Counted from the first letter of the stretch, positions 13,090 to 49,436 are shown. The stretch is 64,000 nt of DNA from Macrostomum lignano (GCA_002269645.1 NIVC01001626.1:62001-126000), one strand, 5' to 3'. Program-made: numbers and translations. The notes: generated from the sequence alone by a model not told the origin.

Positions 13090-13535
13090 TCCCTTGATGG
13101 GTACATTGTCTATGGCGTAGAGTAGTTCTATGGCAGTGGGTGCTGCTGTCTTGATGGGTACATTGTCTATGGCTGCTTCTGTCTTGATGGGTATATTGTC
13201 TATGGCCCAGAGTAGTTCTATGGCAGTGACTGCTTCTGTCTTGATGGGTACATTATCTATGGCTGCTTCTGTCTTGATGGGTACATTGTCTATGGCCCAG
13301 AGTAGTTCTATGGCAGTGGCTGCTGCTGCCTTGATGGGTACATTGTCTATGGCCCAGAGTAGTTCTATGGCAGTGACTGCTTCTGTCTTGATGGGTACAT
13401 TATCTATGGCTGCTTCTGTCTTGATGGGTACATTGTCTATGGCCCAGAGTGGTTCTATGGCAGTGGCTGCTGCTGCCTTGATGGGTACATTGTCTATGGC
13501 CCAGAGTAGTTCTATGGCAGTGGCTGCTGCTGCAG
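13090..13535. repeat. Composite 33/57-bp minisatellite
   Basis: Alternating TTGATGGGTACATTGTCTATGGC and CCAGAGTAGTTCTATGGCAGTG blocks. Confidence 0.9.
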
Positions 13536-14094
13536 TGAAGTGGATTCTTAACTTGAATGGCTCAGTTATCAACCTGGCGAACAGAATAAAAGAGCAACAA
13601 ACGCAGGGGTAGCAGAGTAGACCAAGCTCCCCTCAGCCTGAGCTCCCTTAGCAGATTAGCGGCAATCGATGCTCAGAGGGATTTCACCACCGAAGAAAAG
13701 CAGACTATCGGTGGTCATCTGTGTTGCTCAAGTAGCAGTGGCCATTTGCTTAATTGCATTGCTGCTCACCCCACTGCACCCAACACGGCTCCCAGACTCC
13801 CACCCGCCACTGCAGCGGCCACACAGTCTGTCCAAAGTGGTGAAAAAACAAAATTAAAAATTCTCTAAATGGACCGTTTTGAATATTAAATTTCATTTTG
13901 CTTTAATAACTGATGCGCCAGCAGTGTGAGCTCTGACCCCGTCCTCACCACCGCACCCAGCTTCTCTGACTGGGCCTCTGGGCAGAGGGAACCGGATTTG
14001 ACTGCATGACATCCTATGAGTGCATGTTCTCCTGAGCACATGACACCCACATATAGACTCTGGCTATTTTATGGAAGTCTCATCCAAATACTTG

Positions 14095-14716
14095 TCCTCA
14101 TCCTCATCCTCATCCTCATCATCATCCTCATCCTTATCATCATCCTCATCCTCATCCTTATCCTCATCCTCATCCTTATCCTCATCCTCATCCTCATCCT
14201 CATTCTCATCCTCATCCTCATCCTCATCCTCATCCTTATCCTCATCCTCATCCTCATTTTCATCCTCATCCTCATCCTCATCCTTATCCTCATCCTCATC
14301 CTCATTTTCATCCTCATCCTCATCCTCATTCTCATCCTCATCCTCATTTTCATCCTCATCCTCATCCTCATTCTCATCCTCATCCTCATCCTCATCCTCA
14401 TCCTCATTTTCATCCTCATCCTCATCCTCATTCTCATCCTCATCCTCATCCTTATCTTCATCCTCATCCTCATCCTCATCCTCATCCTCATCCTCATCCT
14501 TATCCTCATCCTCATCCTCATCCTCATTCTCATTCTCATCCTCATCCTCATTCTCATCCTCATCCTCATCCTCATTCTCACCCTCATCCTCATCCGCATC
14601 CTCATCCTCATCCTTATCCTGATCCTGATCCTCATCCTAATTCTCATCCTCATTCTCATTCTCATTCTCATCCTCATTCTCATTCTCATCCTCATCCTCA
14701 TCCTCATCCTCATCCC
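14095..14716. repeat. (ATCCTC)n hexamer microsatellite
   Basis: Source of the IL/SS/MR pseudo-ORFs. Confidence 0.97.
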
Positions 14717-17420: not shown

Positions 17421-20405
17421 CACATCCACATGCACATCCACATCCACATCCACATCCACATCCACATGCACATCCACATCCACATCCACATGCACATCCA
17501 CATCCACATCCACATCCACATCCACATCCACATCCACATCCACATCCACATCCACATCCACATCCACATCCACATGCACATCCACATCCACATCCACATG
17601 CACATCCACATGCACATCCACATCCACATCCACATCCACATCCACATCCACATGCACATGCACATGCACATCCACATCCACATCCACATCCACATCCACA
17701 TCCACATCCACATCCACATCCACATCCACATGCACATCCACATGCACATCCACATCCACATCCACATGCACATCCACATGCACATCCACATCCACATCCA
17801 CATCCACATCCACATCCACATCCACATCCACATCCCCATCCACATCCACATGCACATCCACATCCACATCCACATCCACATCCACATCCACATGCACATG
17901 CACATCCACATCCACATCCACATCCACATCCACATCCACATCCACATGCACATGCACATGCACATCCACATCCACATCCACATCCACATCCACATCCACA
18001 TCCACATCCACATCCCCATCCACATCCACATGCACATCCACATCCACATCCACATCCACATCCACATCCACATGCACATGCACATCCACATGCACATCCA
18101 CATCCACATCCACATCCACATCCACATCCACATCCACATCCACATCCACATCCACATCCACATCCACATCCACATCCACATCCACATCCACATCCACATC
18201 CACATCCACATCCACATCCACATGCACATCCACATGCACATCCACATCCACATCCACATGCACATCCACATGCACATCCACATCCACATCCACATCCCCA
18301 TCCACATCCACATCCACATCCACATCCCCATCCACATCCACATGCACATCCACATCCACATCCACATCCACATCCACATCCACATGCACATGCACATCCA
18401 CATCCACATCCACATCCACATCCACATCCACATCCACATCCACATCCCCATCCACATCCACATGCACATGCACATCCACATCCACATGCACATCCACATC
18501 CACATGCACATGCACATCCACATCCACATCCACATCCACATCCACATCCACATGCACATCCACATCCACATCCACATCCCCATCCACATCCACATGCACA
18601 TGCACATCCACATCCACATGCACATCCACATCCACATGCACATGCACATCCACATCCACATCCACATCCACATCCACATCCACATCCACATGCACATGCA
18701 CATCCACATCCACATCCACATCCACATCCACATCCACATGCACATGCACATCCACATCCACATCCACATCCACATCCACATCCACATCCACATCCACATG
18801 CACATCCACATCCACATGCACATCCACATCCACATGCACATGCACATCCACATCCACATCCACATCCACATCCACATCCACATCCACATCCACATCCACA
18901 TCCACATCCACATCCACATCCACATCCCCATCCACATCCACATGCACATCCACATCCACATCCACATCCACATCCACATCCACATGCACATGCACATCCA
19001 CATCCACATCCACATCCACATCCACATCCACATCCACATCCACATCCCCATCCACATCCACATGCACATGCACATCCACATCCACATGCACATCCACATC
19101 CACATGCACATGCACATCCACATCCACATCCACATCCACATCCACATCCACATCCACATCCACATGCACATCCACATCCACATCCACATCCACATCCACA
19201 TCCACATCCACATCCACATCCACATCCACATCCACATCCACATCCACATCCACATCCACATGCACATGCACATCCACATCCACATCCACATCCACATCCA
19301 CATGCACATGCACATCCACATCCACATCCACATCCACATCCACATCCACATCCACATCCACATCCACATCCACATCCACATCCACATCCACATCCACATC
19401 CACATCCACATCCGCATCCCCATCCCCATCCACATGCACATCCACATCCACATCCACATCCACATCCACATCCACATCCACATCCACATCCACATCCCCA
19501 TCCACATCCACATGCACATCCACATCCACATCCACATTCACATCCACATCCACATGCACATGCACATCCACATCCACATCCACATCCACATCCACATCCA
19601 CATCCACATCCACATCCCCATCCACATCCACATGCACATGCACATCCACATCCACATGCACATCCACATCCACATGCACATGCACATCCACATCCACATC
19701 CACATCCACATCCACATCCACATCCACATCCACATGCACATCCACATCCACATCCACATCCACATCCACATGCACATGCACATGCACATCCACATCCACA
19801 TCCACATCCACATCCACATCCACATCCACATCCACATCCACATCCACATCCACATCCACATCCACATGCACATGCACATCCACATCCACATCCACATCCA
19901 CATCCACATGCACATGCACATCCACATCCACATCCACATCCACATCCACATCCACATCCACATCCACATCCACATCCACATCCACATCCACATCCACATC
20001 CACATCCACATCCACATCCGCATCCCCATCCCCATCCACATGCACATCCACATCCACATCCACATCCACATCCACATCCACATCCACATCCACATCCACA
20101 TCCACATCCACATCCACATCCACATCCACATCCACATCCACATCCACATCCACATCCACATCCACATCCACATCCACATCCACATCCCCATCCACATCCA
20201 CATCCACATCCACATCCACATCCACATCCACATCCACATCCACATCCACATCCACATCCACATCCACATGCACATCCACATCCACATCCACATCCACATC
20301 CACATGCACATCCACATCCACATCCACATGCACATCCACATCCACATCCACATCCACATTCACATCAACATCCACATCCACATCAACATCCACATCCACA
20401 TGCAC
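17421..20405. repeat. ~3-kb (CACATC)n hexamer microsatellite with CACATG/CCCATC variants
   Basis: The hexamer has no stop codon in any frame, hence the TS/HI/VD/MW pseudo-ORFs. Confidence 0.98.
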
Positions 20406-21029
20406 AGAAGAGCCGCATGCACTGCAGTCGCACCAGATGCCCCCTCAAGAAAGATGTGGTAACTTTTATTTTGACCTCGAATTCGTCAGCTTTCTCCGGC
20501 CGGAGGGGGGTCCCCAGTGGCTGAGGGGTGGAGTCTAGCGGAATGGGCGACGCTCGCCTCCCCGCTGCGTCTTCGGACCGCCCTGCAGCTAAGAGGGGCG
20601 GAGTCAAAAGTTTCCTGAAAGATCAGCGGAGTTACATGGAAGGTCGCAGCTCGAGACCCCGGAGCCACAGCAACATGCAGCGGATGTTTAGAAATGCTGG
20701 ATCAAATTTGATGAGGCAGTCTATTTGCATAATTGTCTTCTGCAAGGCACTGCATCACCGTATGAATTTGCAGAAGGCTCGACACATGCGTTCAGTGAAA
20801 TGCAGTTACAGCCAGCCGATCAAAATGGCGTCAACAAGTGGAATGAACTGCGGTATTCACGAGTCTTATGCATTGTTATGCATTTGAGCATGCATATGTT
20901 CGGTAGATACTACTGATGCTGAGATAAAGGTGTGACGTTTTGGGGATTATTTTTGGTATGATAAAATTGGAATTCGTCGAACTTTTATTCGACTATAAAT
21001 TGGAAGAGTAGACGGTGAGAATTCGCCAT

Positions 21030-23687: not shown

Positions 23688-26019
23688 ATGGCCGAAGCCG
23701 AAAACGCCAAGGAGATCGAACCCGCGACCGCCGCCGATGGGCAGCAGCAGCAGCAGGCGGGAGGCATCAGGCAGCGAATCCGCGGCCTGCTGAAGAGGAA
23801 GGACCGGCAGAAGCAGCAGAAGGAGCGGCCGGATGACGCGGTGAAGCTGGGCTGCGGCGGCCTGTTCCGCCGGAAGAAGCGGGCGGAGGCGGGCGATCAG
23901 GAGTCGCAGAAGCCGGCGGAGAAGCCGAAGAAAAGCGGCAAAGGCGGCGAAGTAAAGGTAGGCGAACTGGTTGCAGTTTACTTGAGCTCATTTCCTGCTG
24001 CATGAAGTTTTACTTTTTATGATCATATCGGAGCTTTGGCCAGCATGCATTTGCTCTGCTTGCTGATTGTACGAAGGGGCATTAGGGACATCAGAGACAT
24101 CAGGGACATCAGGGACATCAGAAACATCAGGGACATCAGGGACATCAGAAACATCAGGGACATCAGGGACATCAGAAACATCAGGGACATCAGGGACATC
24201 AGGGATATCAGAGACATTAGGGACATCAGGGACATCAGAGACAGTAGGGACATCAGAAACATCAGGGACATCAGAGACATCAGAGACATTAGGGACATCA
24301 GAGACATCAGAGACATTAGGGACATCAGAGACATCAGAGACATTAGGGACATCAGGGACAGAAACATTAGGGACATCAGGGACATCAGAAACATTAGGGA
24401 CATCAGGGACATCAGAAACATTAGGGACGTCAGGGACATCAGGGACATCAGGGACATCAGGGACATCAGGGACATCAGGGACATCAGGGACATCAGAGAC
24501 ATCAGGGACATCAGGGACATCAGGGACATCAGGGACATCAGGGACATCAGGGACATCAGGGACATCAGGGTCAGCAATGGCCGTAGAACTCAAATTTGCT
24601 TCTAGGAAGAGAAGCAGGAGGTGGAGCTGCAGCCGCAGCCGCAGCAGCCAGATGCGGCCTCAGCGTCAGCGGCAGAGCCGGAGACGTCAGCGCTGGAGCA
24701 GCCGGCATCGAAAGCGCCGGCGAGACCCGAGAATCCGCCAAGGCCGCTGGTTGAACTGGCGGCGAAGTCTGCGCCACAGCCGGACGAGGATGTCAGTGAG
24801 AAGACGGAAGAGAACGCAGCGGAAGAGAACGCAGCGGAGGAAGACAAGACGACAGTTCAGAACGGCCACGCTTTGGAGAGCGAGCCAGAGTCAGAAAATC
24901 AGCGACACGAAGAGGCGGAGCGGCAGTTCCAGCAGGCCTCGGTGGACATGGCGGACGTGACGCCGAAGCCGGGAGTGACAGTAAGGCCTTGAGGCAAAAG
25001 TGGCGATTGCTGCCGCAACGGGTATTAGCTGATCAATAGTTTGCTGACCGCAGTATTTCATAGCTACGAGTGTTTAATGCTTGCTTTTTTACTCGCCTCG
25101 GCTGCTGCTGTTTACTCAACTGGTGAAGGCCGCTTTTGTCGATAAGACCAATTATTGTTGACGGTTTATAGATATCAGCTGCGGGGTCAGGTTGGGGTCA
25201 AGCTGGGGAGAGGCTGGGGTCAGGCTACGGTCAAGCTGGGGTCAGGCTGGGGTCAGGCTGGGGTCAGGCTAGGGTCAGGCTAGGGTCAGGCTGGGGTCAG
25301 GCTGGGGGCAGGCTGGGGACAGGCTGGGGACAGGCTGGGGACAGGCTGGGGGCAGGCTGGGGTCAGGCTAGGGTCAGGCTAGGGTCAGGCTGGGGTCAGG
25401 CTGGGGGCAGGCTGGGGGCAGGCTGAAGTCAGGCTGAGCGAATGCTTGATACATGTATGAAACGCCAAGCAGTTCTACTCATAGTAGTGAAAGGAAGATA
25501 TGTAGATAAATCTTGTAAAAGCGCTGCCGTATATACAGGGGGATAAAAAGACTGCTGCTTACATTATTTCTGAGAGCGCAAACATTTGGCCATTTCTGCT
25601 TTCAGATTGAGCAGGGCCCGCACACGGAGATATGGTCCAGCATCATTAACAAGAGCTTCATCGGTACCGGAGCCTTCAAGCGAGCCGCGGTCTGCAGCCT
25701 GGAGTCTGGCGCCGTGCTGGCCTGCAACCCCGCTGACTTCACGCCCACCGTGCAGCAGGTGGCCGCCCTGCGCGAGAACTTCGACTGCCGCTCCGGCCTG
25801 TCCGCGGCCGGCTTCGGAGTGGCCGACACGGTGTACAGCCTGCTGGACGAGGCCGGCACCAAGGACATTCTGTGCGGCAGCGACGAATCGCGCGGCCAGA
25901 CGCTGCTGGTCTGCAAAACGAAGACGGCGCTGCTGGCGGCCGCGTGCCAGGGCGCCCCGGACCGCGCCGCCGACATGCTGGGCGACATGCGGCAGCACTT
26001 CATCTCGCAGGGGATGTGA
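23688..26019 (+). CDS. Profilin-domain protein A with a ~215-aa charged N-terminal extension; join(23688..23957,24606..24980,25606..26019), 352 aa
   Basis: GT-AG introns, all phase 0 (AAG|GTAGGC, TTCTAG|GAA, ACA|GTAAGG, TTTCAG|ATT). Exon 3 has the profilin pattern W..II...FIG.G..KRAAV.....G...A...F, L..GF......Y, IL.G, KTKTALL and M.QHFISQGM. Confidence 0.85.
24080..24572. repeat. 9-bp repeat (GACATCAGG)n in intron 1 of profilin gene A
   Basis: About 55 copies. Confidence 0.97.
25185..25437. repeat. 10-bp G-rich repeat (GGTCAGGCTG)n in intron 2 of profilin gene A
   Basis: About 24 copies. Confidence 0.95.
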
Positions 26020-26930
26020 GGGCTGCCCGACTGCAAGCGCCGAGTCTCAGTAAGACGCAGCAGCACTTCAAATCTATGGAAATATTTTTAGGCATTGGTG
26101 AGGAGGATTTCCAAGTTATTTTAGCACTAGAACTCACTTCCTGAGCATTCGAAAGTGAATTTTAAAAGTACAAATTTCAGTTTATGCTTAATCAAAAGTT
26201 TTCAAACGGTTAAAACTTAAACTGCAACTAATGCAGTTCCGGAAATCTTCCAATCCGATTGTAACATTAAAACAAATGTAGTTCTGCTGATTTGAAGTGT
26301 TCATCTGTCTCTGGACCCCGACTGGTTGACAGACAACATTGTGGCTTCCCATTGACGTGTCGAATGCATGATTATTAAATTTTCATCTGCATCATTAGCC
26401 TAGCAATGAAGCCGCGCTCTGCTGCGAATGCCAGTGGCGGATTTGGTTTTTACTGTTATCGTTTTATTTACGTAATAAATTTTTAACATTTTGTGTTTCT
26501 TTTGGCTCCAATTCAAACTGTCAGCAGATTTTTATGATTAGAGCAATCAGCTGATGATTTTGCTTTCCTAAAAAAACTAGGAATATTCGACTCTAGGATC
26601 CTACTTTTTGATTATAATATATCTGTACTCGATGGCTTATCAAATAAAAATTTACTTTTCCTGTCTCAAGCTTCCGATATTTTATTATCATTAAAGCGGC
26701 CCAGCTCTTCAGTCAGCTCTGGTGACTGACTCGTCAGATATTGACTTTTCTGCTGTAAATGCGCGCCCAATGACTGATTGGCAGTTACCCATATCATTAA
26801 CATAATGAGTTGCACCTGCGATTTTCAGCCAGATGCTATAAATAAATTGATATTTCAGCTGAAAAATGTCAATTTTTCAAAATGCAATTTCAGCTGAAAA
26901 ATACTCAACCCTTTGTTGTAATTTTCGTGA

Positions 26931-27407
26931 AATTCTCACTATGAGCAGGCCAGCTATTCTCACTATGAGCAGACCAGCTATTCTCACTATGAGCAGACCA
27001 GCTATTCTCACTATGAGCAGACCAGCTATTCTCACTATGAGCAGATCAGCTATTCTCACTATGAGCAGATCAGCTATTCTCACTATGAGCAGACCAGCTA
27101 TTCTCACTATGAGCAGACCAGCTATTCTCACTATGAGCAGACCAGCTATTCTCACTATGAGCAGACCAGCTATTCTCACTATGAGCAGATCAGCTATTCT
27201 CACTATGAGCAGACCAGCTATTCTCACTATGAGCAGACCAGCTATTCTCACTATGAGCAGATCAGCTATTCTCACTATGAGCAGACCAGCTATTCTCACT
27301 ATGAGCAGACCAGCTATTCTCACTATGAGCAGACCAGCTATTCTCACTATGAGCAGGCCAGCTATTCTCACTATGAGCAGGCCAGCTATTCTCACTATGA
27401 GCAGGCT
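26931..27407. repeat. 24-bp minisatellite (TATTCTCACTATGAGCAGACCAGC)n between the profilin paralogues
   Basis: About 20 copies. Confidence 0.97.
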
Positions 27408-27800
27408 ATAACTAATTAATCATTTAAGACGCAAATTATGTCATGCCATACCACATGCCCCTACGGGCCCATTGACCCGCAAGAATGATTGCGTCACGAC
27501 TGCGCTGACATATTGAAACGCATGAGTCACATGAGCAGGTTAGTATCAGCAGGTGACGCAATACCTTTGATAAGAATGCTTTGATAACGCAGCTCGTGGT
27601 GACCACACAGCCCAGACACCACGTGCTCTGCTTTCTATCAAGAGTTTTTGGCACGGTGGATTCCCGTGGCGACTCGCTTATTAGCAAGCTCAAGTTTATA
27701 AGGCCCGCTCCGGGCCGCAAGTATGCAGCAAGACAGCAGCTGGTTAACCAGCCAGAATCAATCAATGCTCAGCGGCTTCAGCTTCAGCTTCGATTTCACA

Positions 27801-29320
27801 ATGACTGAGCAGGGCCGCTACAGCAGCGGTGAGGTCGAACCTGAGACCGTCGGCGACGATCCGCCGCAGCAGCAGAGAAAGCAGGCAGCTGGAGGCGGCC
27901 TGAGGCAACGAATCCGCGACCTGCTGCTGAGGCGGAACCGCGACCGCAGGCGCAGGCAGCAGAAGGAGTGGCGGCCCGCTGACGACTCGGTGAAGCTGCT
28001 GGGCTTCTGCGGGTTGCTGCACCGGACGAAGCGCAGGGAGTCTGGAGCCGGCTGCATCAAGAAGCCGTCAGAGGTAGGTTGGAAGCCATTTTCCTGATTC
28101 GTCAACTTTTTGGCAACTTGCCAAGGCCAGCAAATTCATTAAAGCGATGCTCGCCCCTTGCTTCTAGGAGCAGGAGTTGGAAGATCGGCAGCAGAGTGAT
28201 TCGGCCACCAAGCCGGAGCTGTCATCGGAGCAGCCGGCGGCGTTGACAGCGCCAGCCCGACTGGAGAGTCCACCGCGGCCTCTGCTGGAGTTGGCAAAAA
28301 AAACACGGGAAGAGAAGACACCGGAAGAAAAGACACCGGAAGAGAAGACACCGGACAAGAAGACGCCGGAAGAGAAGACACCGGAAGAGAAGACACCGGA
28401 CAAGAAGACGCCGGAAGAGAAGACACGGGAAGAGAAGACACCGGAAGAGAAGACACCGGACAAGAAGACACTGGACGAGAAGACACTGAACGAGAAGAGG
28501 CCGGAAGAAAAGACACCGGACGAGAAGATACCGGACGAGAAGACACCGGACGAGAAGACAACGAAAGAAGAGACGCCCGAAAAGAAGACACCGGAAGCGA
28601 AAAAGAAGGCAACAGCGAAGAGCGGCTCCAAAAAGAAGACACCGAAGAAGAAGACAATTGAAAAGAAGACACCAGAAAATTCGATAACGGAAGAGAACAC
28701 CCCGGAAGACGCTGCAAGCATACCAGCCAAGCCAGAAGTAAGTGTAATACCCAAATGGAAACAGTTATTTACTTCTCAAGACTCAGGGCCCGCTAAATTC
28801 GAAGCTCAAAACCATTCTTAATGACGACAGCATTGAATTTCTCTGAATAAACTCTGGCACGCCAGAACTAAACAAAAACGATGACGTTTACCCGCGTCAG
28901 CCGCAGATGAACCTGGGCCCACACGCGGAGATGTGGTCCAGCATCATTAACAAGAGCTTCATCGGTACCGGAGCCTTCAAGCGAGCCGCGGTCTGCAGCC
29001 TGGAGTCTGGCGCCGTGCTGGCCTGCAACCCCGCTGACTTCACGCCCACCGTGCAGCAGGTGGCCGCCCTGCGCGAGAACTTCGACTGCCGCTCCGGCCT
29101 GTCCGCGGCCGGCTTCGGAGTGGCCGACACGGTGTACAGCCTGCTGGACGAGGCCGGCACCAAGGACATTCTGTGCGGCAGCGACGAATCGCGCGGCCAG
29201 ACGCTGCTGGTCTGCAAAACGAAGACGGCGCTGCTGGCGGCCGCGTGCCAGGGCGCCCCGGACCGCGCCGCCGACATGCTGGGCGACATGCGGCAGCACT
29301 TCATCTCGCAGGGGATGTGA
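27801..29320 (+). CDS. Profilin-domain protein B with a ~280-aa charged N-terminal extension containing EEKTP/DKKTP repeats; join(27801..28073,28168..28737,28907..29320), 418 aa
   Basis: Same exon structure and phases as gene A (GAG|GTAGGT, TTCTAG|GAG, GAA|GTAAGT, CCGCAG|ATG). Exon 1 is homologous to gene A (GGLRQRIR.LL, DD.VKL.G..GL..R.KR). AATAAA at about 29512. Confidence 0.85.
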
Positions 29321-29769
29321 GGGCTGTGCGGCAGATGTGGAAAAGAATAGATAAGACCATTCAACTTATTTTACGGTATTCGTTCGCATAAGTATCATTG
29401 CTGTTTTACTTCTCAGCTTTTATAAAGTAAAAGTAATGCGCTGTCTCATTTTATGAACGCATTAAAGATAATGTTGCTAATTTCAAAGGAGCTTTGCAAG
29501 GGCGCTGCTCAAATAAACGCATTCAACGTCAGGTGAGTCTACTTCAAAACTCATGACAAAGTATATTTGAAAATCCAGTGCGCACTTGGCCAAACTTTTC
29601 AAATTCCGGCATGCTTGTTTCGTACTTCCTTGACTCTGCTTTAATTAACCAAACAAGCAGAGATGTTAAACGAAAGGACATGTCTATGTTAAAATGCATC
29701 TGAGTGGGGTTTGAATAAAGCCGGGCAGAGCACATTATACAAAATCTCAACTGTCCCAATGCTGCTCAG

Positions 29770-32310
29770 ATGGGACTCATGAGGCCAATACCTGGCTCCG
29801 CTGTCTGCTGGCTGTTGGCTGCCTTGATATCCGGAGCAGCTGAAGCCGGGAGAACTTCCGTGGAACACCCTGGACTCTTCATCCTGCCCCTGTTTCGGCC
29901 GCCGAGTCCGCAGGAGAGGCGGGCGGTCCCGCATCCGGTAATCTGGAGCGCTCACGAAGCCGGCAGTCGCAGCCGGGCGATGCCAGCAGGCAGCCCAGCG
30001 GCCCTGGCCTGCCTACTCGATGGCCTCGGGACAAACGGCACGGCAGCGCTGGAGTCGCTCGAGTGGACGCTGGTGAGCGATGCCGGCCAGGTGACGCGGC
30101 ACAGCCTCCACGGCCAGGATGGAGACTTCCGGTTCCACCTGAGCGGGAAGCTGTTCACAGGCCGCTACAGCGCTCTATCAGGGTCCACTCTGATTGTCTC
30201 CTCCTTGCCTGCGCGGCTGCGAGTCGGCTGCCAGTACCGAGCTGCTGGCCTGAACGCCACCGTCAGGTCCGACTGGCTGCACCTGTGGGATGAGCGGGCG
30301 GAGGTCAAGAGATGGCGGAATGCCAACCTGCACTGCGATCGCACCGTCTACAAGACTCCGGACGGTCACGACCAGACTGCGCTCGCCGTTGCCTACAGCT
30401 GCCTCGGGCTCGGGGACACCCGGCTGCTAGAGACGGCAGTTGTCGCGATGTACGCAAAAGCCGGTAAAGCCGGAACCTGTTCGACCGAAGCCGCTTCTCG
30501 AGAGAGTAAGTTCAAGATTTTTTCGAACTCATCAGACTCGGGACCGAGCTTCTTTGGAGTCGCATTCGGGGGGCGCGTTCGATTCGGTTGGGCGCTGGGA
30601 GCGGGGGGCAGCGAGGCCAACGCGAGCGCTCAGTCAGGCCAGCTCGACCAGACGGAGACCTGCCTCTGCCTCATGCTGGATGCCACTCTGCCAAGCTCAC
30701 GGACTGTCCAGCTTCACTATTCTGTTCCCCAGGCAGCAGCCAGCGCCTCTGTGACCGTGCCGCCGCAGCAGCCGGTGCTCATTGTGCCAATCACTCACGG
30801 AGGCCTTCCCACGGAGGTGCAGCTGGACGAGCTGCTTGACCCGCTGCCTGAACGAACAGCGCCTTGTCCGCTCCTGTGCCTGCGGCCGGACGCTGCTGCT
30901 TGCTGGCACCGATGGGCGGGTCCGGGCCGGGCCGCCGCTCCCCGAAAACCCCCGGACTCGCAGCCGCTGTCGCTGCAGCTGCGTCACTCAGACAAGCAGG
31001 CGGCTGGTATTTGGACCTGCAGCGCCCAGTTTTACCCAGCTGCGTCTGTGTCGTACGCCGTCTCTTCAAAGCCGCGTCCTGCACTGCGCGACCCTCGACT
31101 GCCTCGCCGAACTGCGGTGCTGCAATCGCAGAGCGTCATCCTGAACTGCTCACTGCTCGGCCTGGCTCAGAACGCCAGCGCCGAGTTCGACATCTACGCT
31201 TCGATTGGTGCAGCAAACTTCAGTCTGCAGAAGTTTAAGCGCGCTTCGCCAGTCGGTGCCATCGAGCTCAGTGTTAACGTGTCAGCAATCTCGTCAGTCC
31301 CAACAGGCGCCATGCTTCTCCTGCGATGCCGGGGTGCGGAGCTCAGTGAGGGGCGCTCGATCGTTGACTATGCGACAGTGAACATTCTGCCCCAACCGGA
31401 GGTGAAGTCGCTGGATGCTTGTCCCGACTCTGGCGTGCCTTGCCAGGCGGACTGCCGGTCCCCTTTCGAGTCGCAGCTTCGCTCCCTCGGACTGTCCATC
31501 TCCTACTTGTTCTACATCTACAGCGAGTCCGGCCAGCTGGAGAGGACTTTTTCCAGCTCAGGCGTGCTGCCTGACGTCAGAAGCTCCGTGGCTGGAAGCA
31601 ATATTAAAGGCGTTTTAAAGCCGATTTGCCAGCAGTTTTTCCACCACATCAGCTCTCCACCAGGCCAAGCCTCAATTGGTTCAATCGGTGGCGCCTCAAA
31701 GCAGCTGGATGACTTGCTGAAGTTTAGTCCGGAACTTTGGGATCGGCCGCTATATGGGATGCCGCAGTCTGATGATTCGCAGGGGAACTCCAGGAAGAAT
31801 TCCACGGCTGAGAACAGGGCCGGCGTGTCTTCCATGATGTACGTCCTCATCAGCATCTTCGGGGTCGGCGGCCTGGCCATCTTCATGGCGGTCGGTATCG
31901 GCGTGAACGAGTGGAAGAAGGACGTTCGGAACGCCGACCCGACGCTGATCTCCGACGATCCCGCGCCGACCGACGGACAGAAGAGCGCCGTCACGGCCTC
32001 CTCCGGGGGCAAGCAGGCGGGCAGCAAGGTGGGACAAGGCAAGGCGCCACTCGGAGGGATGGGGGCCGCCCGTCAGGTGGATCAGAAAGCGGCTCAAGGA
32101 GGGATGGGGGCTGCTCGACAGGCGGATCAGAAAGTAGCTCAAGGAGGGATGGGGCCCGCTCAGCAGGCGTATCAGAAAGCGGCTCAAGGAGGGATGGGGC
32201 CCACTCAGCAGGCGTATCAGAAAGCGGCTCAAGGAGGGATGGGGCCCACTCAGCAGGCGGATCAGAATGCGGCTCCAGCGGCCAAGAACGCAACAGGTAA
32301 AACACCATAG
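29770..32310 (+). CDS. 846-aa type I single-pass membrane protein with diverged Ig-like ectodomain and 15-aa Gly/Gln/Ala cytoplasmic repeats
   Basis: 2.5-kb non-repetitive ORF. Signal peptide (CWLLAALISGAAEA), Ig-type strands (VGCQY, AAGIWTCSAQF, QSVILNCSL), several N-x-S/T sites, hydrophobic helix MYVLISIFGVGGLAIFMAVGIGV, then 5x GGMG.A.Q..QKAAQ. A possible donor (CAG|GTAAAA, ~32297) lies just before the stop. Confidence 0.8.
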   Translation: MGLMRPIPGSAVCWLLAALISGAAEAGRTSVEHPGLFILPLFRPPSPQERRAVPHPVIWSAHEAGSRSRAMPAGSPAALACLLDGLGTNGTAALESLEWTLVSDAGQVTRHSLHGQDGDFRFHLSGKLFTGRYSALSGSTLIVSSLPARLRVGCQYRAAGLNATVRSDWLHLWDERAEVKRWRNANLHCDRTVYKTPDGHDQTALAVAYSCLGLGDTRLLETAVVAMYAKAGKAGTCSTEAASRESKFKIFSNSSDSGPSFFGVAFGGRVRFGWALGAGGSEANASAQSGQLDQTETCLCLMLDATLPSSRTVQLHYSVPQAAASASVTVPPQQPVLIVPITHGGLPTEVQLDELLDPLPERTAPCPLLCLRPDAAACWHRWAGPGRAAAPRKPPDSQPLSLQLRHSDKQAAGIWTCSAQFYPAASVSYAVSSKPRPALRDPRLPRRTAVLQSQSVILNCSLLGLAQNASAEFDIYASIGAANFSLQKFKRASPVGAIELSVNVSAISSVPTGAMLLLRCRGAELSEGRSIVDYATVNILPQPEVKSLDACPDSGVPCQADCRSPFESQLRSLGLSISYLFYIYSESGQLERTFSSSGVLPDVRSSVAGSNIKGVLKPICQQFFHHISSPPGQASIGSIGGASKQLDDLLKFSPELWDRPLYGMPQSDDSQGNSRKNSTAENRAGVSSMMYVLISIFGVGGLAIFMAVGIGVNEWKKDVRNADPTLISDDPAPTDGQKSAVTASSGGKQAGSKVGQGKAPLGGMGAARQVDQKAAQGGMGAARQADQKVAQGGMGPAQQAYQKAAQGGMGPTQQAYQKAAQGGMGPTQQADQNAAPAAKNATGKTP

Positions 32311-42973: not shown

Positions 42974-45900
42974 GTTTGCACCTGACTTAGCGTGCACCAG
43001 TGTCTGTAGCCTAAATGTGTTTGTACCTGACTTAGCGTGCACCAACCAGTGTCTGTAGCCTAAATGTGTTTGTACCTGACTTAGCGTGCACCAACCATTG
43101 TCTGTAGCCTAAATATGTTTGTACCTGACTTAGCGTGCACCAACCATTGTCTGTAGCCTAAATGTGTTTGTACCTGACTTAGCGTGCACCAACCAGTGTC
43201 TGTAGCCTAAATGTGTTTGCACCTGACTTAGCGTGCACCAACCAGTGTCTGTAGCCTAAATGTGTTTGCACCTGACTTAGCGTGCACCAACCAGTGTCTG
43301 TAGCCTAAATGTGTTTGCACCTGACTTAGCGTGCACCAACCAGTGTCTGTAGCCTAAATGTGTTTGCACCTGACTTAGCGTGCACCAACCAGTGTCTGTA
43401 GCCTAAATGTGTTTGTACCTGACTTAGCGTGCACCAACCAGTGTCTGTAGCCTAAATGTGTTTGTACCTGACTTAGCGTGCACCAGTGTCTGTAGCCTAA
43501 GTGTGTTTGCACCTGACTTAGCGTGCACCAGTGTCTGTAGCCTAAGTGTGTTTGCACCTGACTTAGCGTGCACCAACCAGTGTCTGTAGCCTAAATGTGT
43601 TTGTACCTGACTTAGCGTGCACCAGTGTCTGTAGCCTAAATGTGTTTGCACCTGACTTAGCGTGCACCAGTGTCTGTAGCCTAACTGTGTTTGCACCTGA
43701 CTTAGCGTGAACCAACCAGTGTCTGTAGCCTAACTGTGTTTGCACCTGACTTAGCGTGAACCAACCAGTGTCTGTAGCCTAACTGTGTTTGCACCTGACT
43801 TAGCGTGCACCAGTGTCTGTAGCCTAAGTGTGTTTGCACCTGACTTAGCGTGAACCAACCAGTGTCTGTAGCCTAAGTGTGTTTGCACCTGACTTAGCGT
43901 GAACCAACCAGTGTCTGTAGCCTAAGTGTGTTTGCACCTGACTTAGCGTGAACCAACCAGTGTCTGTAGCCTAAGTGTGTTTGCACCTGACTTAGCGTGC
44001 ACCAGTGTCTGTAGCCTAAGTGTGTTTGCACCTGACTTAGCGTGCAACCAGTGTCTGTAGCCTAAGTGTGTTTGCACCTGACTTAGCGTGCACCAGTGTC
44101 TGTAGCCTAAGTGTGTTTGCACCTGACTTAGCGTGCACCAGTGTCTGTAGCCTAAGTGTGTTTGCACCTGACTTAGCGTGAACCAACCAGTGTCTGTAGC
44201 CTAAGTGTGTTTGCACCTGACTTAGCGTGAACCAACCAGTGTCTGTAGCCTAACTGTGTTTGCACCTGACTTAGCGTGAACCAACCAGTGTCTGTAGCCT
44301 AACTGTGTTTGCACCTGACTTAGCGTGCACCAGTGTCTGTAGCCTAAGTGTGTTTGCACCTGACTTAGCGTGCACCAGTGTCTGTAGCCTAAGTGTGTTT
44401 GCACCTGACTTAGCGTGCACCAGTGTCTGTAGCCTAAGTGTGTTTGCACCTGACTTAGCGTGCCAACCAGTGTCTGTAGCCTAAGTGTGTTTGCACCTGA
44501 CTTAGCGTGCACCAGTGTCTGTAGCCTAAGTGTGTTTGCACCTGACTTAGCGTGCACCAGTGTCTGTAGCCTAAGTGTGTTTGCACCTGACTTAGCGTGC
44601 ACCAGTGTCTGTAGCCTAAGTGTGTTTGCACCTGACTTAGCGTGCACCAGTGTCTGTAGCCTAAGTGTGTTTGCACCTGACTTAGCGTGCACCAGTGTCT
44701 GTAGCCTAAGTGTGTTTGCACCTGACTTAGCGTGCACCAGTGTCTGTAGCCTAAGTGTGTTTGCACCTGACTTAGCGTGCACCAGTGTCTGTAGCCTAAG
44801 TGTGTTTGCACCTGACTTAGCGTGCACCAGTGTCTGTAGCCTAAGTGTTTGCACCTGACTTGCGTGCACCAGTGTCTGTAGCCTAAGTGTGTTTGCACCT
44901 GACTTAGCGTGCACCAGTGTCTGTAGCCTAAGTGTGTTTGCACCTGACTTAGCGTGCACCAGTGTCTGTAGCCTAAGTGTGTTTGCACCTGACTTAGCGT
45001 GCACCAGTGTCTGTAGCCTAAGTGTGTTTGCACCTGACTTGCGTGCACCAGTGTCTGTAGCCTAAGTGTGTTTGCACCTGACTTGCGTGCACCAGTGTCT
45101 GTAGCCTAAGTGTGTTTGCACCTGACTTAGCGTGCACCAGTGTCTGTAGCCTAAGTGTGTTTGCACCTGACTTAGCGTGCACCAGTGTCTGTAGCCTAAG
45201 TGTGTTTGCACCTGACTTAGCGTGCACCAGTGTCTGTAGCCTAAGTGTGTTTGCACCTGACTTAGCGTGCACCAGTGTCTGTAGCCTAAGTGTGTTTGCA
45301 CCTGACTTAGCGTGCACCAGTGTCTGTAGCCTAAGTGTGTTTGCACCTGACTTGCGTGCACCAGTGTCTGTAGCCTAAGTGTGTTTGCACCTGACTTAGC
45401 GTGCACCAGTGTCTGTAGCCTAAGTGTGTTTGCACCTGACTTGCGTGCACCAGTGTCTGTAGCCTAAGTGTGTTTGCACCTGACTTAGCGTGCACCAGTG
45501 TCTGTAGCCTAAGTGTGTTTGCACCTGACTTAGCGTGCACCAGTGTCTGTAGCCTAAGTGTGTTTGCACCTGACTTAGCGTGCACCAGTGTCTGTAGCCT
45601 AAGTGTGTTTGCACCTGACTTGCGTGCACCAGTGTCTGTAGCCTAAGTGTGTTTGCACCTGACTTGCGTGCACCAGTGTCTGTAGCCTAAGTGTGTTTGC
45701 ACCTGACTTGCGTGCACCAGTGTCTGTAGCCTAAGTGTGTTTGCACCTGACTTAGCGTGCACCAGTGTCTGTAGCCTAAGTGTGTTTGCAACTGACTTGC
45801 GTGCACCAGTGTCTGTAGCCTAAGTGTGTTTGCACCTGACTTGCGTGCACCAGTGTCTGTAGCCTAAGTGTGTTTGCACCTGACTTAGCGTGCACCAGTG

Positions 45901-48575
45901 TCTGTAGCCTAAGTGTGTTTGCACCTGACTTAGCGTGCACCAACCAGTGTCTGTAGCCTAAGTGTGTTTGCACCTGACTTAGCGTGCACCAGTGTCTGTA
46001 GCCTAAGTGTGTTTGCACCTGACTTAGCGTGAACCAATCAGTGTCTGTAGCCTAAGTGTGTTTGCACCTGACTTAGCGTGCAACCAGTGTCTGTAGCCTA
46101 AGTGTGTTTGCACCTGACTTAGCGTGCACCAGTGTCTGTAGCCTAAGTGTGTTTGCACCTGACTTAGCGTGAACCAACCAGTGTCTGTAGCCTAAGTGTG
46201 TTTGCACCTGACTTAGCGTGCACCAGTGTCTGTAGCCTAAGTGTATTTGCACCTGACTTAGCGTGCACCAGTGTCTGTAGCCTAACTGTGTTTGCACCTG
46301 ACTTAGCGTGCACCAGTGTCTGTAGCCTAAGTGTGTTTGCACCTGACTTAGCGTGCACCAGTGTCTGTAGCCTAACTGTGTTTGCACCTGACTTAGCGTG
46401 CACCAGTGTCTGTAGCCTAAGTGTGTTTGCACCTGACTTAGCGTGAACCAACCAGTGTCTGTAGCCTAAGTGTGTTTGCACCTGACTTAGCGTGCACCAG
46501 TGTCTGTAGCCTAAGTGTGTTTGCACCTGACTTAGCGTGCACCAGTGTCTGTAGCCTAAGTGTGTTTGCACCTGACTTAGCGTGCACCAGTGTCTGTAGC
46601 CTAAGTGTGTTTGCACCTGACTTAGCGTGCACCAGTGTCTGTAGCCTAAGTGTGTTTGCACCTGACTTAGCGTGCACCAGTGTCTGTAGCCTAAGTGTGT
46701 TTGCACCTGACTTAGCGTGCACCAGTGTCTGTAGCCTAAGTGTGTTTGCACCTGACTTAGCGTGCACCAGTGTCTGTAGCCTAAGTGTGTTTGCACCTGA
46801 CTTAGCGTGCACCAGTGTCTGTAGCCTAAGTGTGTTTGCACCTGACTTAGCGTGCACCAGTGTCTGTAGCCTAAGTGTGTTTGCACCTGACTTAGCGTGC
46901 ACCAGTGTCTGTAGCCTAAGTGTGTTTGCACCTGACTTAGCGTGAACCAACCAGTGTCTGTAGCCTAAGTGTGTTTGCACCTGACTTAGCGTGAACCAGT
47001 GTCTGTAGCCTAAGTGTGTTTGCACCTGACTTGGCGTGCACCAGTGTCTGTAGCCTAAGTGTATTTGCACCTGACTTAGCGTGAACCAACCAGTGTCTGT
47101 AGCCTAAGTGTGTTTGCACCTGACTTGCGTGCACCAGTGTCTGTAGCCTAAGTGTATTTGCACCTGACTTAGCGTGCACCAGTGTCTGTAGCCTAAGTGT
47201 GTTTGCACCTGACTTAGCGTGCACCAGTGTCTGTAGCCTAAGTGTATTTGCACCTGACTTAGCGTGCACCAGTGTCTGTAGCCTAACTGTGTTTGCACCT
47301 GACTTAGCGTGCACCAGTGTCTGTAGCCTAAGTGTGTTTGCACCTGACTTAGCGTGAACCAACCAGTGTCTGTAGCCTAAGTGTGTTTGCACCTGACTTA
47401 GCGTGCACCAGTGTCTGTAGCCTAAGTGTGTTTGCACCTGACTTAGCGTGCACCAGTGTCTGTAGCCTAAGTGTGTTTGCACCTGACTTGCGTGCACCAG
47501 TGTCTGTAGCCTAAGTGTGTTTGCACCTGACTTGCGTGCACCAGTGTCTGTAGCCTAAGTGTGTTTGCACCTGACTTGCGTGCACCAGTGTCTGTAGCCT
47601 AAGTGTGTTTGCACCTGACTTGCGTGCACCAGTGTCTGTAGCCTAAGTGTGTTTGCACCTGACTTGCGTGCACCAGTGTCTGTAGCCTAAGTGTGTTTGC
47701 ACCTGACTTGCGTGCACCAGTGTCTGTAGCCTAAGTGTGTTTGCACCTGACTTAGCGTGCACCAGTGTCTGTAGCCTAAGTGTGTTTGCACCTGACTTAG
47801 CGTGCACCAGTGTCTGTAGCCTAAGTGTGTTTGCACCTGACTTGCGTGCACCAGTGTCTGTAGCCTAAGTGTGTTTGCACTGACTTGCGTGCACCAGTGT
47901 CTGTAGCCTAAGTGTGTTTGCACCTGACTTGCGTGCACCAGTGTCTGTAGCCTAAGTGTGTTTGCACCTGACTTGCGTGCACCAGTGTCTGTAGCCTAAG
48001 TGTGTTTGCACCTGACTTGCGTGCACCAGTGTCTGTAGCCTAAGTGTGTTTGCACCTGACTTAGCGTGCACCAGTGTCTGTAGCCTAAGTGTGTTTGCAC
48101 CTGACTTAGCGTGCACCAGTGTCTGTAGCCTAAGTGTGTTTGCACCTGACTTGGCGTGCACCAACCAGTGTCTGTAGCCTAAGTGTGTTTGCACCTGACT
48201 TAGCGTGCACCAGTGTCTGTAGCCTAAGTGTGTTTGCACCTGACTTGGCGTGCACCAACCAGTGTCTGTAGCCTAAGTGTGTTTGCACCTGACTTGCGTG
48301 CACCAGTGTCTGTAGCCTAAGTGTGTTTGCACCTGACTTGGCGTGCACCAGTGTCTGTAGCCTAAGTGTGTTTGCACCTGACTTAGCGTGAACCAACCAG
48401 TGTCTGTAGCCTAAATGTGTTTGCACCTGACTTAGCGTGCACCAGTGTCTGTAGCCTAAGTGTGTTTGCACCTGACTTAGCGTGCACCAGTGTCTGTAGC
48501 CTAAGTGTTTGCACCTGACTTGGCGTGCACCAGTGTCTGTAGCCTAAGTGTGTTTGCACTGACTTGCGTGCACCA
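42974..48575. repeat. ~5.6-kb satellite of a 45-bp monomer (44- and 49-bp variants), roughly 120 copies
   Basis: Unit GCACCTGACTTAGCGTGCACCAGTGTCTGTAGCCTAAGTGTGTTT; source of the HAKSGANTLRLQTLV ORFs. Confidence 0.98.
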
Positions 48576-49436
48576 GTAGCCTAATGTGTGCAGTTAGCGA
48601 CAGTGTCTGCCTGGGTTCAGACTTCAACACCAGTAGCAATGTTTTGCTACGCGGAAGTTCTCCATGTTGCTGCAGCTTCACATTTCGTGGCGCACCTGCA
48701 CTCAAAGTCTCTCTAAGTGTTTGCAAACAGCAACAATTTAGCTGTGGCAGACTTCACTGAAGCCAGTCAACATAAGTCTGTTGCAAGTTCCAGGTTAGCC
48801 GTCGCAGACTCCGGCAGATGAAGCTAGTTTCAAGCATAGTCTCATTATCGCCAAGTTGCCAGGGACTGTCCGCTTTGTCTTAAGCAGCAGGAGCCATTGA
48901 CAGTGCTCCAACCCTCAAGGCCCAAAATATTTGCTGAGCTTGGGTTTTTTGCGTTCTCCAACTCAAAAAGCATTCAAAGCGAAATTTGCAATTTGCCAAG
49001 GGTTGGCGGGTTGTGGAGTTTTTGGCCTACGTATCTGGAGAATACTCATCATTTCGGGACTCAATACTCACTTCAATACTCACTTCAATTAAAGTACGGC
49101 GGGAACTTTAATTGGCAGGGAAGCTCCGGTGCTGGTGCAAGACTTGACGCTGCTTGAACTCAGGAATTTTGAAATCAGATGATTCTGTCCTTGAGTTTCT
49201 CTCGGCAGCTTGCAGAGCGGCTTCAATGCACGAATATTCAATTCGACCAGCCTCCAACTCTCTGATCCAAGCCTGTGATTGGCTCTCATATTCTGAGTCT
49301 GAATCTTTGTCAAACTGGAGCACATCTCCAATCCAGGAGCCAGATTGAGAACACCATGCACGCCATCCCTAGCAACCATCTCTATTAAAGCAGCTGCAGA
49401 TGAAGGAATCGTATGCGCATTGCGCAGGACGGAAAG

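What the first reader, a model, noticed from the sequence alone, without database searches (positions are those of the whole stretch)
23688..29320. Tandem pair of giant profilins: profilin domain fused behind 215-280 aa of charged, disordered sequence
Seen: two three-exon genes with matching phase-0 splice sites join an E/K/Q/P-rich N-terminal region to a complete C-terminal profilin domain (352 and 418 aa). Known: canonical profilins are single-domain proteins of about 125-140 aa, and their N- and C-terminal aromatics form the poly-L-proline site. Here W3 is kept, but the Y6 position is I, the W31-equivalent is L and the terminal Y is M. That resembles the loss of polyproline binding in vertebrate profilin-4. 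Inference: a lineage-specific tethered profilin family, possibly acting in sperm or cilia through lipid binding rather than formin/VASP delivery.
Basis: partly seen in the sequence, partly recalled or inferred. Interest (0 to 1): 0.8.

Follow-up and report, generated by a model that had tools for sequence, protein, structure and literature searches.

The report
Tandem long-tailed profilin genes, flatworm
Two neighbouring genes of the flatworm Macrostomum lignano encode a real but very divergent profilin domain behind a long, mostly disordered tail; they belong to a small undescribed profilin subfamily, which is unusual for this normally single-domain actin regulator but is not a new kind of system.

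Summary
The window is Macrostomum lignano scaffold NIVC01001626.1. Both three-exon genes exist, with GT-AG introns in phase 0, and give 352 and 418 aa. The C-terminal 137 aa pass Pfam Profilin (47 bits, cut-off 25). The predicted structure superposes on Acanthamoeba and S. pombe profilin (TM 0.88-0.89).

RNA-seq-derived GenBank models confirm the fusion for gene 1. Exon 2 is an optional cassette: the model at this locus is exon 1 + exon 3 (227 aa). Gene 2 has no GenBank model.

New points:
- A third paralogue has the same exon layout, and all three genes sit in three homeologous loci.
- Relatives with basic N-terminal tails occur in Opisthorchis and in unidentified marine and metagenomic eukaryotes.
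- The family is a separate clade, not PFN4.
- The two profilin exons are kept identical by gene conversion (393 nt without a difference).
- Exon 1 carries a conserved basic-hydrophobic motif under purifying selection (dN/dS 0.29).
- The profilin domain itself is acidic.

The poly-proline site is systematically altered (Y6 to I and W31 to non-Trp in 10/10 members). Actin binding cannot be judged from sequence. Membrane tethering through the basic tail is my preferred mechanism, but it is inferred. Sperm or cilia expression is untested.

The parts
23688..23957 (+). Gene 1 exon 1 (90 aa, net charge +9, pI 10.0). Identical to exon 1 of GenBank model BOX15_Mlig020979g1.
   Evidence: dN/dS against the congener transcript L001 is 0.29.
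23760..23882 (+). Conserved basic-hydrophobic motif of gene 1, residues 25-65: GGIRQRIRGLLKRK...VKLGCGGLFRRKKR.
   Evidence: Conserved in gene 2, the congener protein P0004 and gene 3 (P0008). Basic + hydrophobic windows are enriched over shuffles. AF2 predicts only a low-confidence helix at 27-45.
24075..24570 (.). 9-bp minisatellite (55 copies) filling intron 1 of gene 1.
24606..24980 (+). Gene 1 exon 2: optional cassette, 125 aa, acidic (net -20), phase 0-0. Contains the PARPENPPRPLVELAAK and ERQFQQASVDM islands.
   Evidence: Included in paralogue models P0001 and P0002; skipped in P0003, the model at this locus. Charge. pLDDT is below 50 apart from a weak helix at 187-207.
25183..25436 (.). 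11-bp minisatellite (23 copies) in intron 2 of gene 1.
25606..26019 (+). Gene 1 exon 3: the whole profilin domain (137 aa) plus the stop codon. No ATG lies upstream of the domain within this exon.
   Evidence: Pfam, 47 bits. PDB profile hits. AF2 pLDDT 81-94 and Foldseek TM 0.88-0.89.
25633..26025 (+). Gene-conversion tract: 393 nt identical to 28934-29326 in gene 2.
   Evidence: The same locus-specific substitutions are shared by both exon 3 copies in homeolog L003.
26932..27404 (.). Intergenic 24-bp minisatellite (19.7 copies). The array is much longer in homeolog L003.
27801..28073 (+). Gene 2 exon 1 (91 aa, net +9, pI 10.6). Alternative in-frame ATGs at 27723 and 27765.
   Evidence: 43/78 aligned residues are identical to gene 1 exon 1; dN/dS 0.60.
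28168..28737 (+). Gene 2 exon 2 (190 aa). Holds the PARLESPPRPLLELAKK island, then about 20 copies of a 15-bp / 5-aa repeat (EEKTP/DKKTP) at 28303-28601.
   Evidence: Repeat number differs in L003, and that copy has a frameshift near the 3' end.
28907..29320 (+). Gene 2 exon 3: profilin domain starting with ATG, plus the stop codon. Alternative in-frame acceptor at 28901.

Best explanation
These are two tandem paralogues of a small, highly divergent profilin subfamily. In this subfamily a complete profilin fold is permanently attached to an N-terminal tail.

Shown:
- Each gene has three coding exons. Exon 1 is a basic segment with two clusters of hydrophobic plus Lys/Arg residues and a conserved Cys. 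Exon 2 is a fast-evolving, low-complexity spacer (acidic in gene 1, an EEKTP repeat in gene 2) that can be skipped without changing frame. Exon 3 is the whole profilin domain.
- Gene 1 is expressed as the fusion.
- The architecture predates the split from a third M. lignano paralogue. It recurs in relatives from other organisms.
- The two profilin exons are homogenised by gene conversion.

Inferred mechanism:
- The profilin domain has a remodelled poly-proline groove (Y6 to I, W31 to non-Trp) and an acidic surface. I therefore do not expect it to work as a free carrier that hands actin to formins or VASP.
- Instead, the basic-hydrophobic exon 1 motif places it on an acidic surface. The most likely target is the cytoplasmic face of membranes, in a MARCKS-like electrostatic manner, perhaps helped by acylation of the conserved Cys.
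- The optional exon 2 spacer sets the reach or masks the charge.
- Whether the domain still binds actin cannot be told from sequence.

My confidence is about 0.9 for what the genes are and about 0.3 for the membrane-tether mechanism.
For: Identity of the domain:
- Pfam Profilin, 47 bits against a cut-off of 25.
- Family profile against PDB: Acanthamoeba profilin E = 5e-15, then yeast and plant profilins.
- AF2 domain pLDDT 81-94. Foldseek: 1acf TM 0.88 at rmsd 2.0, 3d9y TM 0.89.

The fusion is real for gene 1:
- GenBank models are built from RNA-seq (PMC5730564). They include exons 1+2+3 (P0001, P0002) and exons 1+3 (P0003).
- Gene 1 exon 3 has no start codon before the domain.
- An intronless 934-nt contig from another run encodes an exon-1-like segment plus profilin, joined at the same point.
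- Gene 3 (P0008) has the same three exons, and its exon 3 also starts at IEQ.

Selection: dN/dS is 0.29 for exon 1 and 0.25 for exon 3 against the congener.

Family architecture:
- The N-terminal tails of P0014, P0015, P0016 and P0035 have net charge +5 to +10, while the three of their domains computed (P0014, P0015, P0035) are acidic (pI 4.5-4.9).
- Basic + hydrophobic windows number 59 against 16.4 expected from shuffles.
- P0035 has a complete N-terminus, MGNKSSS, which fits the N-myristoylation pattern.

Poly-proline site: Y6 to I in 10/10 members and W31 to non-Trp in 10/10, whereas both are invariant in six canonical profilins.

Gene conversion: 393 identical nt with unalignable flanks, and shared locus-specific changes in L003.
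Against: - I found no expression, localisation or binding data.
- The M. lignano proteins start MAEA or MTEQ, so they cannot be N-myristoylated.
- The helical hydrophobic moment of the motif is no higher than in shuffles (P 0.16-0.9).
- AF2 gives the tail pLDDT below 50 apart from weak helices, with no sign that it docks on the domain.
- I chose the window criteria for the basic + hydrophobic test after seeing the sequences.
- The same basic clusters would also fit a nuclear localisation signal or a calmodulin site.
- W3 and H133 are retained, and PFN3 still binds poly-proline with half a site (PMC2694148). Residual poly-proline binding is therefore possible.
- Gene 2 lacks a transcript-based model. 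Its exon 2 is frameshifted in one homeolog.
Confidence: 0.6

Rival explanations
1. Conventional profilin with a localisation tail. The domain still binds G-actin, and perhaps proline-rich ligands weakly. The tail only concentrates a normal profilin activity at a particular site.
For: - The fold is intact and close to the actin-binding Acanthamoeba and yeast profilins.
- W3 and H133 are kept.
- Apart from R74, the human actin-contact residues also vary in the true actin-binding yeast, Acanthamoeba and Drosophila profilins. R74 itself is S in Drosophila and Q in Arabidopsis. Their absence here therefore proves little.
Against: - Y6 and W31, invariant in all six canonical profilins, are replaced in all 10 family members.
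- R74, K125 and R88 are D, D and C in gene 1.
- The chain continues N-terminally right at the poly-proline groove. From my own knowledge, N-terminal tags are known to impair poly-proline binding. Only the title of Nejedla 2017 was seen, in a reference list.
- A canonical 130-aa profilin exists in flatworms and does bind poly-proline and actin (FhProfilin, PMC7727368).
Confidence: 0.3
2. Nuclear or nucleic-acid-associated profilin-like protein. The KRK...RRKKR clusters act as a bipartite nuclear localisation signal or as a nucleic-acid-binding segment.
For: Two Lys/Arg clusters lie about 25 residues apart in exon 1. Gene 2 exon 2 gave a weak, sub-threshold Pfam hit to the histone-H1-like family HC2, driven by composition.
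Against: - The clusters are always paired with aromatic or aliphatic residues and a Cys.
- One relative has an N-myristoylation-type start, which points to membranes.
- The HC2 hit is below its cut-off (29.5 against 40).
Confidence: 0.1
3. Gene 2 does not make the 418-aa protein. It is either a decaying duplicate whose profilin exon is kept intact only by gene conversion from gene 1, or it is expressed from exon 3 alone (ATG 28907, 137 aa), for example by spliced-leader trans-splicing.
For: - None of the three loci has a GenBank model for gene 2.
- Exon 3 starts with ATG.
- Exon 2 is frameshifted in L003.
- dN/dS of exon 1 against gene 1 is relaxed, at 0.60.
- Trans-splicing is common in this species (PMC5730564).
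Against: - The ORF and all splice sites are intact in two of the three homeologs.
- Between homeologs, exon 1 shows 3 synonymous and 1 non-synonymous change.
- The basic motif and the PPRPL island are conserved with gene 1.
- The GenBank annotation deliberately dropped transcripts that overlap repeats, which could explain the missing model.
- The frameshift sits in an A-rich run of a long-read assembly and would be harmless if exon 2 is skipped.
Confidence: 0.25
4. The pair is one transcription unit that makes chimeric or two-domain proteins: gene 1 exon 1 spliced to gene 2 exon 3, or read-through past the gene 1 stop into gene 2.
For: Older UniRef models of M. lignano include a 904-aa protein with both profilin domains (P0006). 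They also include a 273-aa protein that joins gene-1-type exon 1 to a gene-2-type exon 3 start, MNLGPHAEMW (P0007).
Against: - Those models come from an earlier, more fragmented assembly, and their evidence is unknown.
- The RNA-seq-guided GenBank models end gene 1 at its own stop.
- Identical exon 3 copies make read placement ambiguous.
Confidence: 0.05

Closest known systems
Canonical single-domain profilins (Acanthamoeba profilin I/II, S. pombe Cdc3, S. cerevisiae Pfy1; Pfam PF00235)
   Same: Same fold and Pfam family. These are the best sequence and structure matches. Shared core motifs are W3, the LVGTG turn and the TPxE/Q helix start.
   Different: - A tail of 90-280 aa precedes the domain.
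- Y6 and W31 of the poly-proline platform are replaced in every member.
- R74 is replaced.
- The domain is acidic.
- The family forms its own clade with 100% bootstrap.
Vertebrate profilin-4 (PFN4)
   Same: A divergent profilin with a degenerate poly-proline site. PFN4 is described as closer to lower-eukaryote profilins, and it does not bind actin or poly-proline in vitro (PMC2694148).
   Different: Not an orthologue.
- The family HMM scores PFN4 at 25-42 bits, below Acanthamoeba at 57.
- The PFN4 HMM scores the family at 8-25 bits, below canonical profilins at 39-79.
- Family + PFN4 group together in only 30% of bootstraps.
- PFN4 has also lost W3, keeps R74, is basic (pI 8.7) and has no tail.
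FhProfilin of Fasciola hepatica (130 aa)
   Same: A flatworm profilin.
   Different: It has the canonical size and binds poly-L-proline and actin but not phosphoinositides (PMC7727368). It probably represents the housekeeping flatworm profilin, not this family. I did not have its sequence for a direct comparison.
MARCKS / GAP-43-type basic effector segments (works-like comparison only)
   Same: Clusters of Lys/Arg mixed with Phe/Leu/Ile, a nearby Cys, and an N-myristoylation-type start in one relative.
   Different: No sequence homology. The M. lignano proteins have no myristoylation signal. Membrane or calmodulin binding is untested. My knowledge of MARCKS is from memory, not from a tool.
Heimdallarchaeota profilin with a disordered N-terminal extension (recalled from memory, not checked here)
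   Same: A precedent for a profilin whose N-terminal extension lies next to the poly-proline site.
   Different: That extension is archaeal and short (tens of residues), with no basic-hydrophobic motif that I know of. It is unrelated in sequence.

Membership tests
Profilin (PF00235) | Sequence match to the family HMM above the curated cut-off | tested here: met
   47 and 46.9 bits against a cut-off of 25, covering profile positions 2/3-127 of 127.
Profilin (PF00235) | [quoted passage not shown] | tested here: met
   AF2 domain pLDDT 81-94, with helix-strand-helix order as in profilin. Foldseek gives TM 0.88-0.89 and rmsd 1.9-2.0 to 1acf and 3d9y.
Profilin (PF00235) | Aromatic poly-L-proline platform (W3, Y6, W31, H/Y133, Y/F139) | tested here: not met
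   Gene 1 and gene 2 have W, I, L, H, M. Y6 to I and W31 to non-Trp hold in 10/10 family members, whereas both are invariant in 6/6 canonical profilins. This is a functional hallmark, not the Pfam definition.
Profilin (PF00235) | Binding of G-actin | not testable with these tools
   The human contact residues R74, R88, K90 and K125 are D, C, S and D here. Most of these positions also vary in true actin-binding yeast, amoeba and fly profilins.
Profilin (PF00235) | Stand-alone protein of about 125-140 aa | tested here: not met
   352 and 418 aa, or 227 aa without exon 2. Gene 1 has no start codon at the domain.
Profilin-4 (PFN4) orthologue group | Closer to PFN4 than to other profilins | tested here: not met
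   HMM cross-scores. NJ bootstrap for family + PFN4 is 30%, and the grouping is absent from the base tree.
Profilin-4 (PFN4) orthologue group | Complete loss of the poly-proline aromatic residues except Y133 | tested here: not met
   W3 is retained in 8/10 members and is F in the other two. F139 is retained in several. PFN4 description from PMC2694148.
Profilin-4 (PFN4) orthologue group | Spermatid-specific expression | not testable with these tools
   No expression data were found in the text or supplements of the Macrostomum papers searched.
Tandem duplicates under concerted evolution (gene conversion) | A tract far more similar than the rest of the duplicated genes, with locus-specific shared substitutions | tested here: met
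   Exon 3 is 98.3% identical, with 393 nt identical in a row, while exon 1 is 68% identical and the introns are unalignable. In L003 both exon 3 copies share the same four changes relative to the window.
Basic-hydrophobic membrane-binding segment (MARCKS-like) | Clustered Lys/Arg with aromatic or aliphatic residues and few acidic residues | tested here: met
   59 qualifying 15-residue windows against 16.4 in shuffles across 8 tails. The criteria were chosen post hoc.
Basic-hydrophobic membrane-binding segment (MARCKS-like) | Lipid anchor (N-myristoyl or S-acyl) and actual binding to acidic membranes | not testable with these tools
   Only relative P0035 starts with MGNKSSS. The M. lignano proteins start MAEA or MTEQ. 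Cys56 is invariant in the alignment, but acylation cannot be predicted here.

The most novel reading that the evidence does not exclude
A conserved, previously undescribed class of profilin-derived proteins in flatworms and some other marine invertebrates. In this reading the profilin fold has given up poly-proline binding, and possibly actin binding. It is held at membranes by a basic-hydrophobic, sometimes acylated, N-terminal segment. It would then act as a membrane-bound adaptor with a new ligand, and an alternatively spliced spacer would tune its reach.
Probability: 0.2. Interest if true: 0.6.

Novelty: new variant of a known kind. Interest (0 to 1): 0.35.

Why it matters
Profilin is one of the most uniform actin regulators. 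It is almost always a free protein of 125-140 aa whose two termini form the poly-proline site. A conserved subfamily that buries the N-terminus in a long tail, and that replaces the two most conserved aromatic residues of that site, shows the fold can be reused for something else. PFN4 suggests the same in vertebrates, but this would be an independent case.

M. lignano allows RNAi and transgenesis, so the function is directly testable. The locus is also a clean example of exon-limited gene conversion in a recently polyploid genome. That has a practical consequence: probes or RNAi triggers against the profilin exon cannot distinguish the two genes in this window.

Tried and rejected
1. PFN4 orthology. 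I obtained a validated PFN4 set. I rejected orthology on HMM cross-scores and the NJ tree.

2. WH2-like reading of IRQRIRGLLKRK. The spacing does not fit the LLxxIxxGxxLKKV pattern as I recall it, and other family members lack an LKKV-type end. I dropped it (by eye).

3. Amphipathic-helix claim. The hydrophobic moment is no higher than in shuffles, so I describe the motif only as basic-hydrophobic.

4. Docking of the tail on the domain. AF2 of the long and short isoforms gives pLDDT below 50 for the tail, except about 51-61 for the weak exon 2 helix (residues 187-207) of the long isoform.

5. Known domains in the tail. Pfam at E up to 1 finds none in gene 1. In gene 2 it finds only sub-threshold compositional hits to HC2 and Extensin.

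6. Literature and expression.
- No paper pairs Macrostomum with profilin in a relevant way.
- The gene IDs appear in no main text.
- Supplements of five Macrostomum papers had no hit, and a sixth paper had no supplements held.

7. Wider sampling.
- The profile search with the word index returned only 5 proteins.
- P0009 and P0017 from the representative search are repeat proteins and spurious.

8. Big ORFs elsewhere in the window. Most are artefacts of tandem repeats.

9. tRNA scan of the window: none found.

Full report
**Where we are.** Window 13688-36019 is 100% identical to Macrostomum lignano scaffold NIVC01001626.1 of assembly GCA_002269645.1 (locus L004). This is a free-living flatworm with a recently duplicated, repeat-rich genome. 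The window is full of micro- and minisatellites.

**The observation.** Joining the proposed exons gives open reading frames of 352 aa (gene 1: 23688-23957, 24606-24980, 25606-26019) and 418 aa (gene 2: 27801-28073, 28168-28737, 28907-29320). All introns are GT-AG and in phase 0.

The last 137 aa of both genes pass Pfam Profilin at 47 bits against a cut-off of 25. They match Acanthamoeba profilin in the PDB. A profile of the wider family matches Acanthamoeba, yeast and plant profilins down to E = 5e-15.

AlphaFold2 models give the domain pLDDT 81-94. Foldseek superposes the full-length model on 1acf and 3d9y with TM 0.88-0.89 at about 2 A. The tail is below pLDDT 50 except for two weak helices, at residues 27-45 and 187-207.

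**Is the fusion real?** The GenBank gene models of this assembly derive from genome-guided RNA-seq assembly, and transcripts that overlapped repeats were filtered out (PMC5730564).
- Two homeologous loci carry models with exons 1+2+3: P0001, 399 aa, partial; and P0002, 373 aa.
- The model at this locus, BOX15_Mlig020979g1 (P0003, 227 aa), is exon 1 joined directly to exon 3.
- Exon 2 is therefore an optional, frame-neutral cassette.
- Gene 1 exon 3 has no ATG before the domain, so the domain cannot be made on its own.
- A 934-nt intronless contig from another sequencing run (82% nucleotide identity) encodes an exon-1-like segment fused to the profilin domain at the same junction. It is most likely a transcript of a congener.

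Gene 2 is less secure.
- It is present in all three homeologous loci, but none carries a GenBank model for it.
- Only an old merged 904-aa model (P0006) covers it.
- Its exon 3 starts with ATG.
- In locus L003 its exon 2 carries a frameshift in an A-rich run.

**A family, not a pair.** An exhaustive phmmer search found only 17 hits at E <= 0.001. The real relatives are:
- a third M. lignano gene type (P0008 and two homeologs, 413-415 aa, 48% identical in the domain);
- Opisthorchis viverrini T265_01883;
- two unnamed MetaClust (UniParc UPI) entries of unknown organism;
- a TARA ocean scaffold;
- several metagenome or read-archive contigs.

The third M. lignano gene has the same three-exon layout, and its exon 3 begins at the same IEQ. 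P0014, P0015, P0016 and P0035 also carry N-terminal tails of 60-150 aa. The ORFs of P0015 and P0035 are complete, with stop codons upstream.

**Relation to known profilins.** I obtained validated PFN4 sequences. I checked my typed human PFN1 and yeast Pfy1 against the PDB.
- The family HMM scores Acanthamoeba at 57 bits, yeast 47, fly 45 and PFN4 25-42.
- The PFN4 HMM scores canonical profilins at 39-79 bits and the family at only 8-25.
- In a neighbour-joining tree the family has 100% bootstrap support and PFN4 99.8%. The two group together in only 30% of replicates.

The family is a separate, more divergent clade and not PFN4. Flatworms also have a canonical 130-aa profilin that binds poly-proline and actin (FhProfilin, PMC7727368).

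**Binding sites.** The key poly-proline residues are W3, Y6, N9, W31, Y/H133 and F/Y139 (PMC2694148). Gene 1 and gene 2 have W, I, K, L, H and M at these positions. Y6 to I and W31 to non-Trp hold in all 10 family members, whereas both residues are invariant in six canonical profilins.

The site is only partly lost, however. PFN3 still binds poly-proline with half a site.

The human actin-contact residues R74, R88, K90 and K125 are D, C, S and D here. Most of these positions also vary in actin-binding yeast, amoeba and fly profilins, so actin binding cannot be decided from sequence.

The basic residues proposed for PIP2 binding (R74, R88, R135) are absent, and the domain is acidic with pI 5.0. 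PFN1 and PFN4 have pI 8.5 and 8.7. Lipid binding by the domain itself is therefore unlikely.

**The tail.**
- Exon 1 is basic (net +9, pI 10). Exon 2 of gene 1 is acidic (net -20). Exon 2 of gene 2 is about 20 copies of a 15-bp EEKTP/DKKTP repeat.
- Exon 1 contains GG(I/L)RQRIR.LL.R(K/R) and VKL.G.CG.L.R.KR. Both are conserved between genes 1 and 2 and the congener. Gene 3 has recognisable versions, GGFRFFWKKKK and GCGGLFKRKTR.
- Its dN/dS against the congener is 0.29, similar to 0.25 for the profilin exon.
- Across eight tails, windows that combine at least 5 Lys/Arg, at least 4 hydrophobic residues and at most 1 acidic residue number 59, against 16.4 in shuffles. I chose these criteria post hoc.
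- The helical hydrophobic moment is not significant.
- One relative starts MGNKSSS, which fits the N-myristoylation pattern.

Together with the acidic domains, this suggests that the tail supplies a basic-hydrophobic targeting segment. The most likely target is acidic membranes. A nuclear signal or a calmodulin site are alternatives.

**Concerted evolution.** Exon 3 of the two genes is 98.3% identical over 423 bp, while exon 1 is 68% identical and the introns do not align. All seven exonic differences lie in the first 27 nt, and the next 393 nt are identical. In the diverged homeolog L003, both exon 3 copies share the same four locus-specific substitutions. Gene conversion has therefore acted within each locus since the genome duplication.

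**Verdict.** These are real genes with a real profilin fold and an unusual but conserved architecture, belonging to an undescribed divergent subfamily. I file them as a new variant of a known kind. The sperm, cilia and lipid reading remains speculation. My preferred mechanism is a profilin fold tethered by a basic N-terminal motif, with an optional spacer. It is inferred, at about 0.3. No paper mentions these genes.

Noticed in passing
window 29770-32310 (+): Single-exon 846-aa ORF immediately downstream of gene 2, annotated as a gene in GenBank. It has a signal-peptide-like start, one transmembrane-like segment near the C-terminus, and a tail of AQGGMG..QQA.QK repeats. No Pfam hit. An 833-aa counterpart sits at the same place in homeolog L003.
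   Followed up: partly
window 49413-51914 (+): 833-aa ORF with a signal-like start, a PAN domain (24.7 bits, cut-off 21.4), and then about 700 aa of Thr/Pro mucin-like repeats encoded by a 21-bp tandem array.
   Followed up: partly
window 1-1724, 17421-20406, 42974-48577, 52180-56934 and many more: The window is dominated by tandem arrays: (TATC)n, a 3-kb (CACATC)n, a 45-bp unit x 122 copies, and a 15-bp unit x 319 copies. Most long ORFs on both strands here are artefacts of these repeats.
   Followed up: yes
window 26932-27404; L003 about 12940-14520: The 24-bp minisatellite between the two profilin genes has about 20 copies here but spans about 1.6 kb (12940-14520) in the homeologous locus L003. 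The intron minisatellites also differ in length between homeologs.
   Followed up: partly
L002 12022-12434; L003 15289-16019: Homeolog L002 lacks one nucleotide at the last codon of gene 1, which gives P0001 a different C-terminal end (…ISQGCEGCPTASAESQ). Homeolog L003 has a frameshift near the end of gene 2 exon 2. Either could be a long-read assembly error or a real lesion.
   Followed up: partly
window 26013-26019 and 27776; proteins P0006, P0007: Older UniRef models splice from a GTGAGG that overlaps the gene 1 stop codon into the gene 2 leader, giving a 904-aa two-profilin protein. Another joins gene-1-type exon 1 to a gene-2-type exon 3. The evidence behind these models is unknown.
   Followed up: partly
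window 61612-62052: 58-bp tandem repeat whose unit contains GGTTCGAATCC, which resembles a tRNA T-arm. ARAGORN finds no tRNA in the window. It may be a tRNA-derived repeat.
   Followed up: partly
window 24805-24838; P0002: A 15-bp repeat encoding EENAA in gene 1 exon 2 is expanded in homeolog L003 (protein of 373 aa instead of 352). The spacer exon changes length by repeat slippage.
   Followed up: partly
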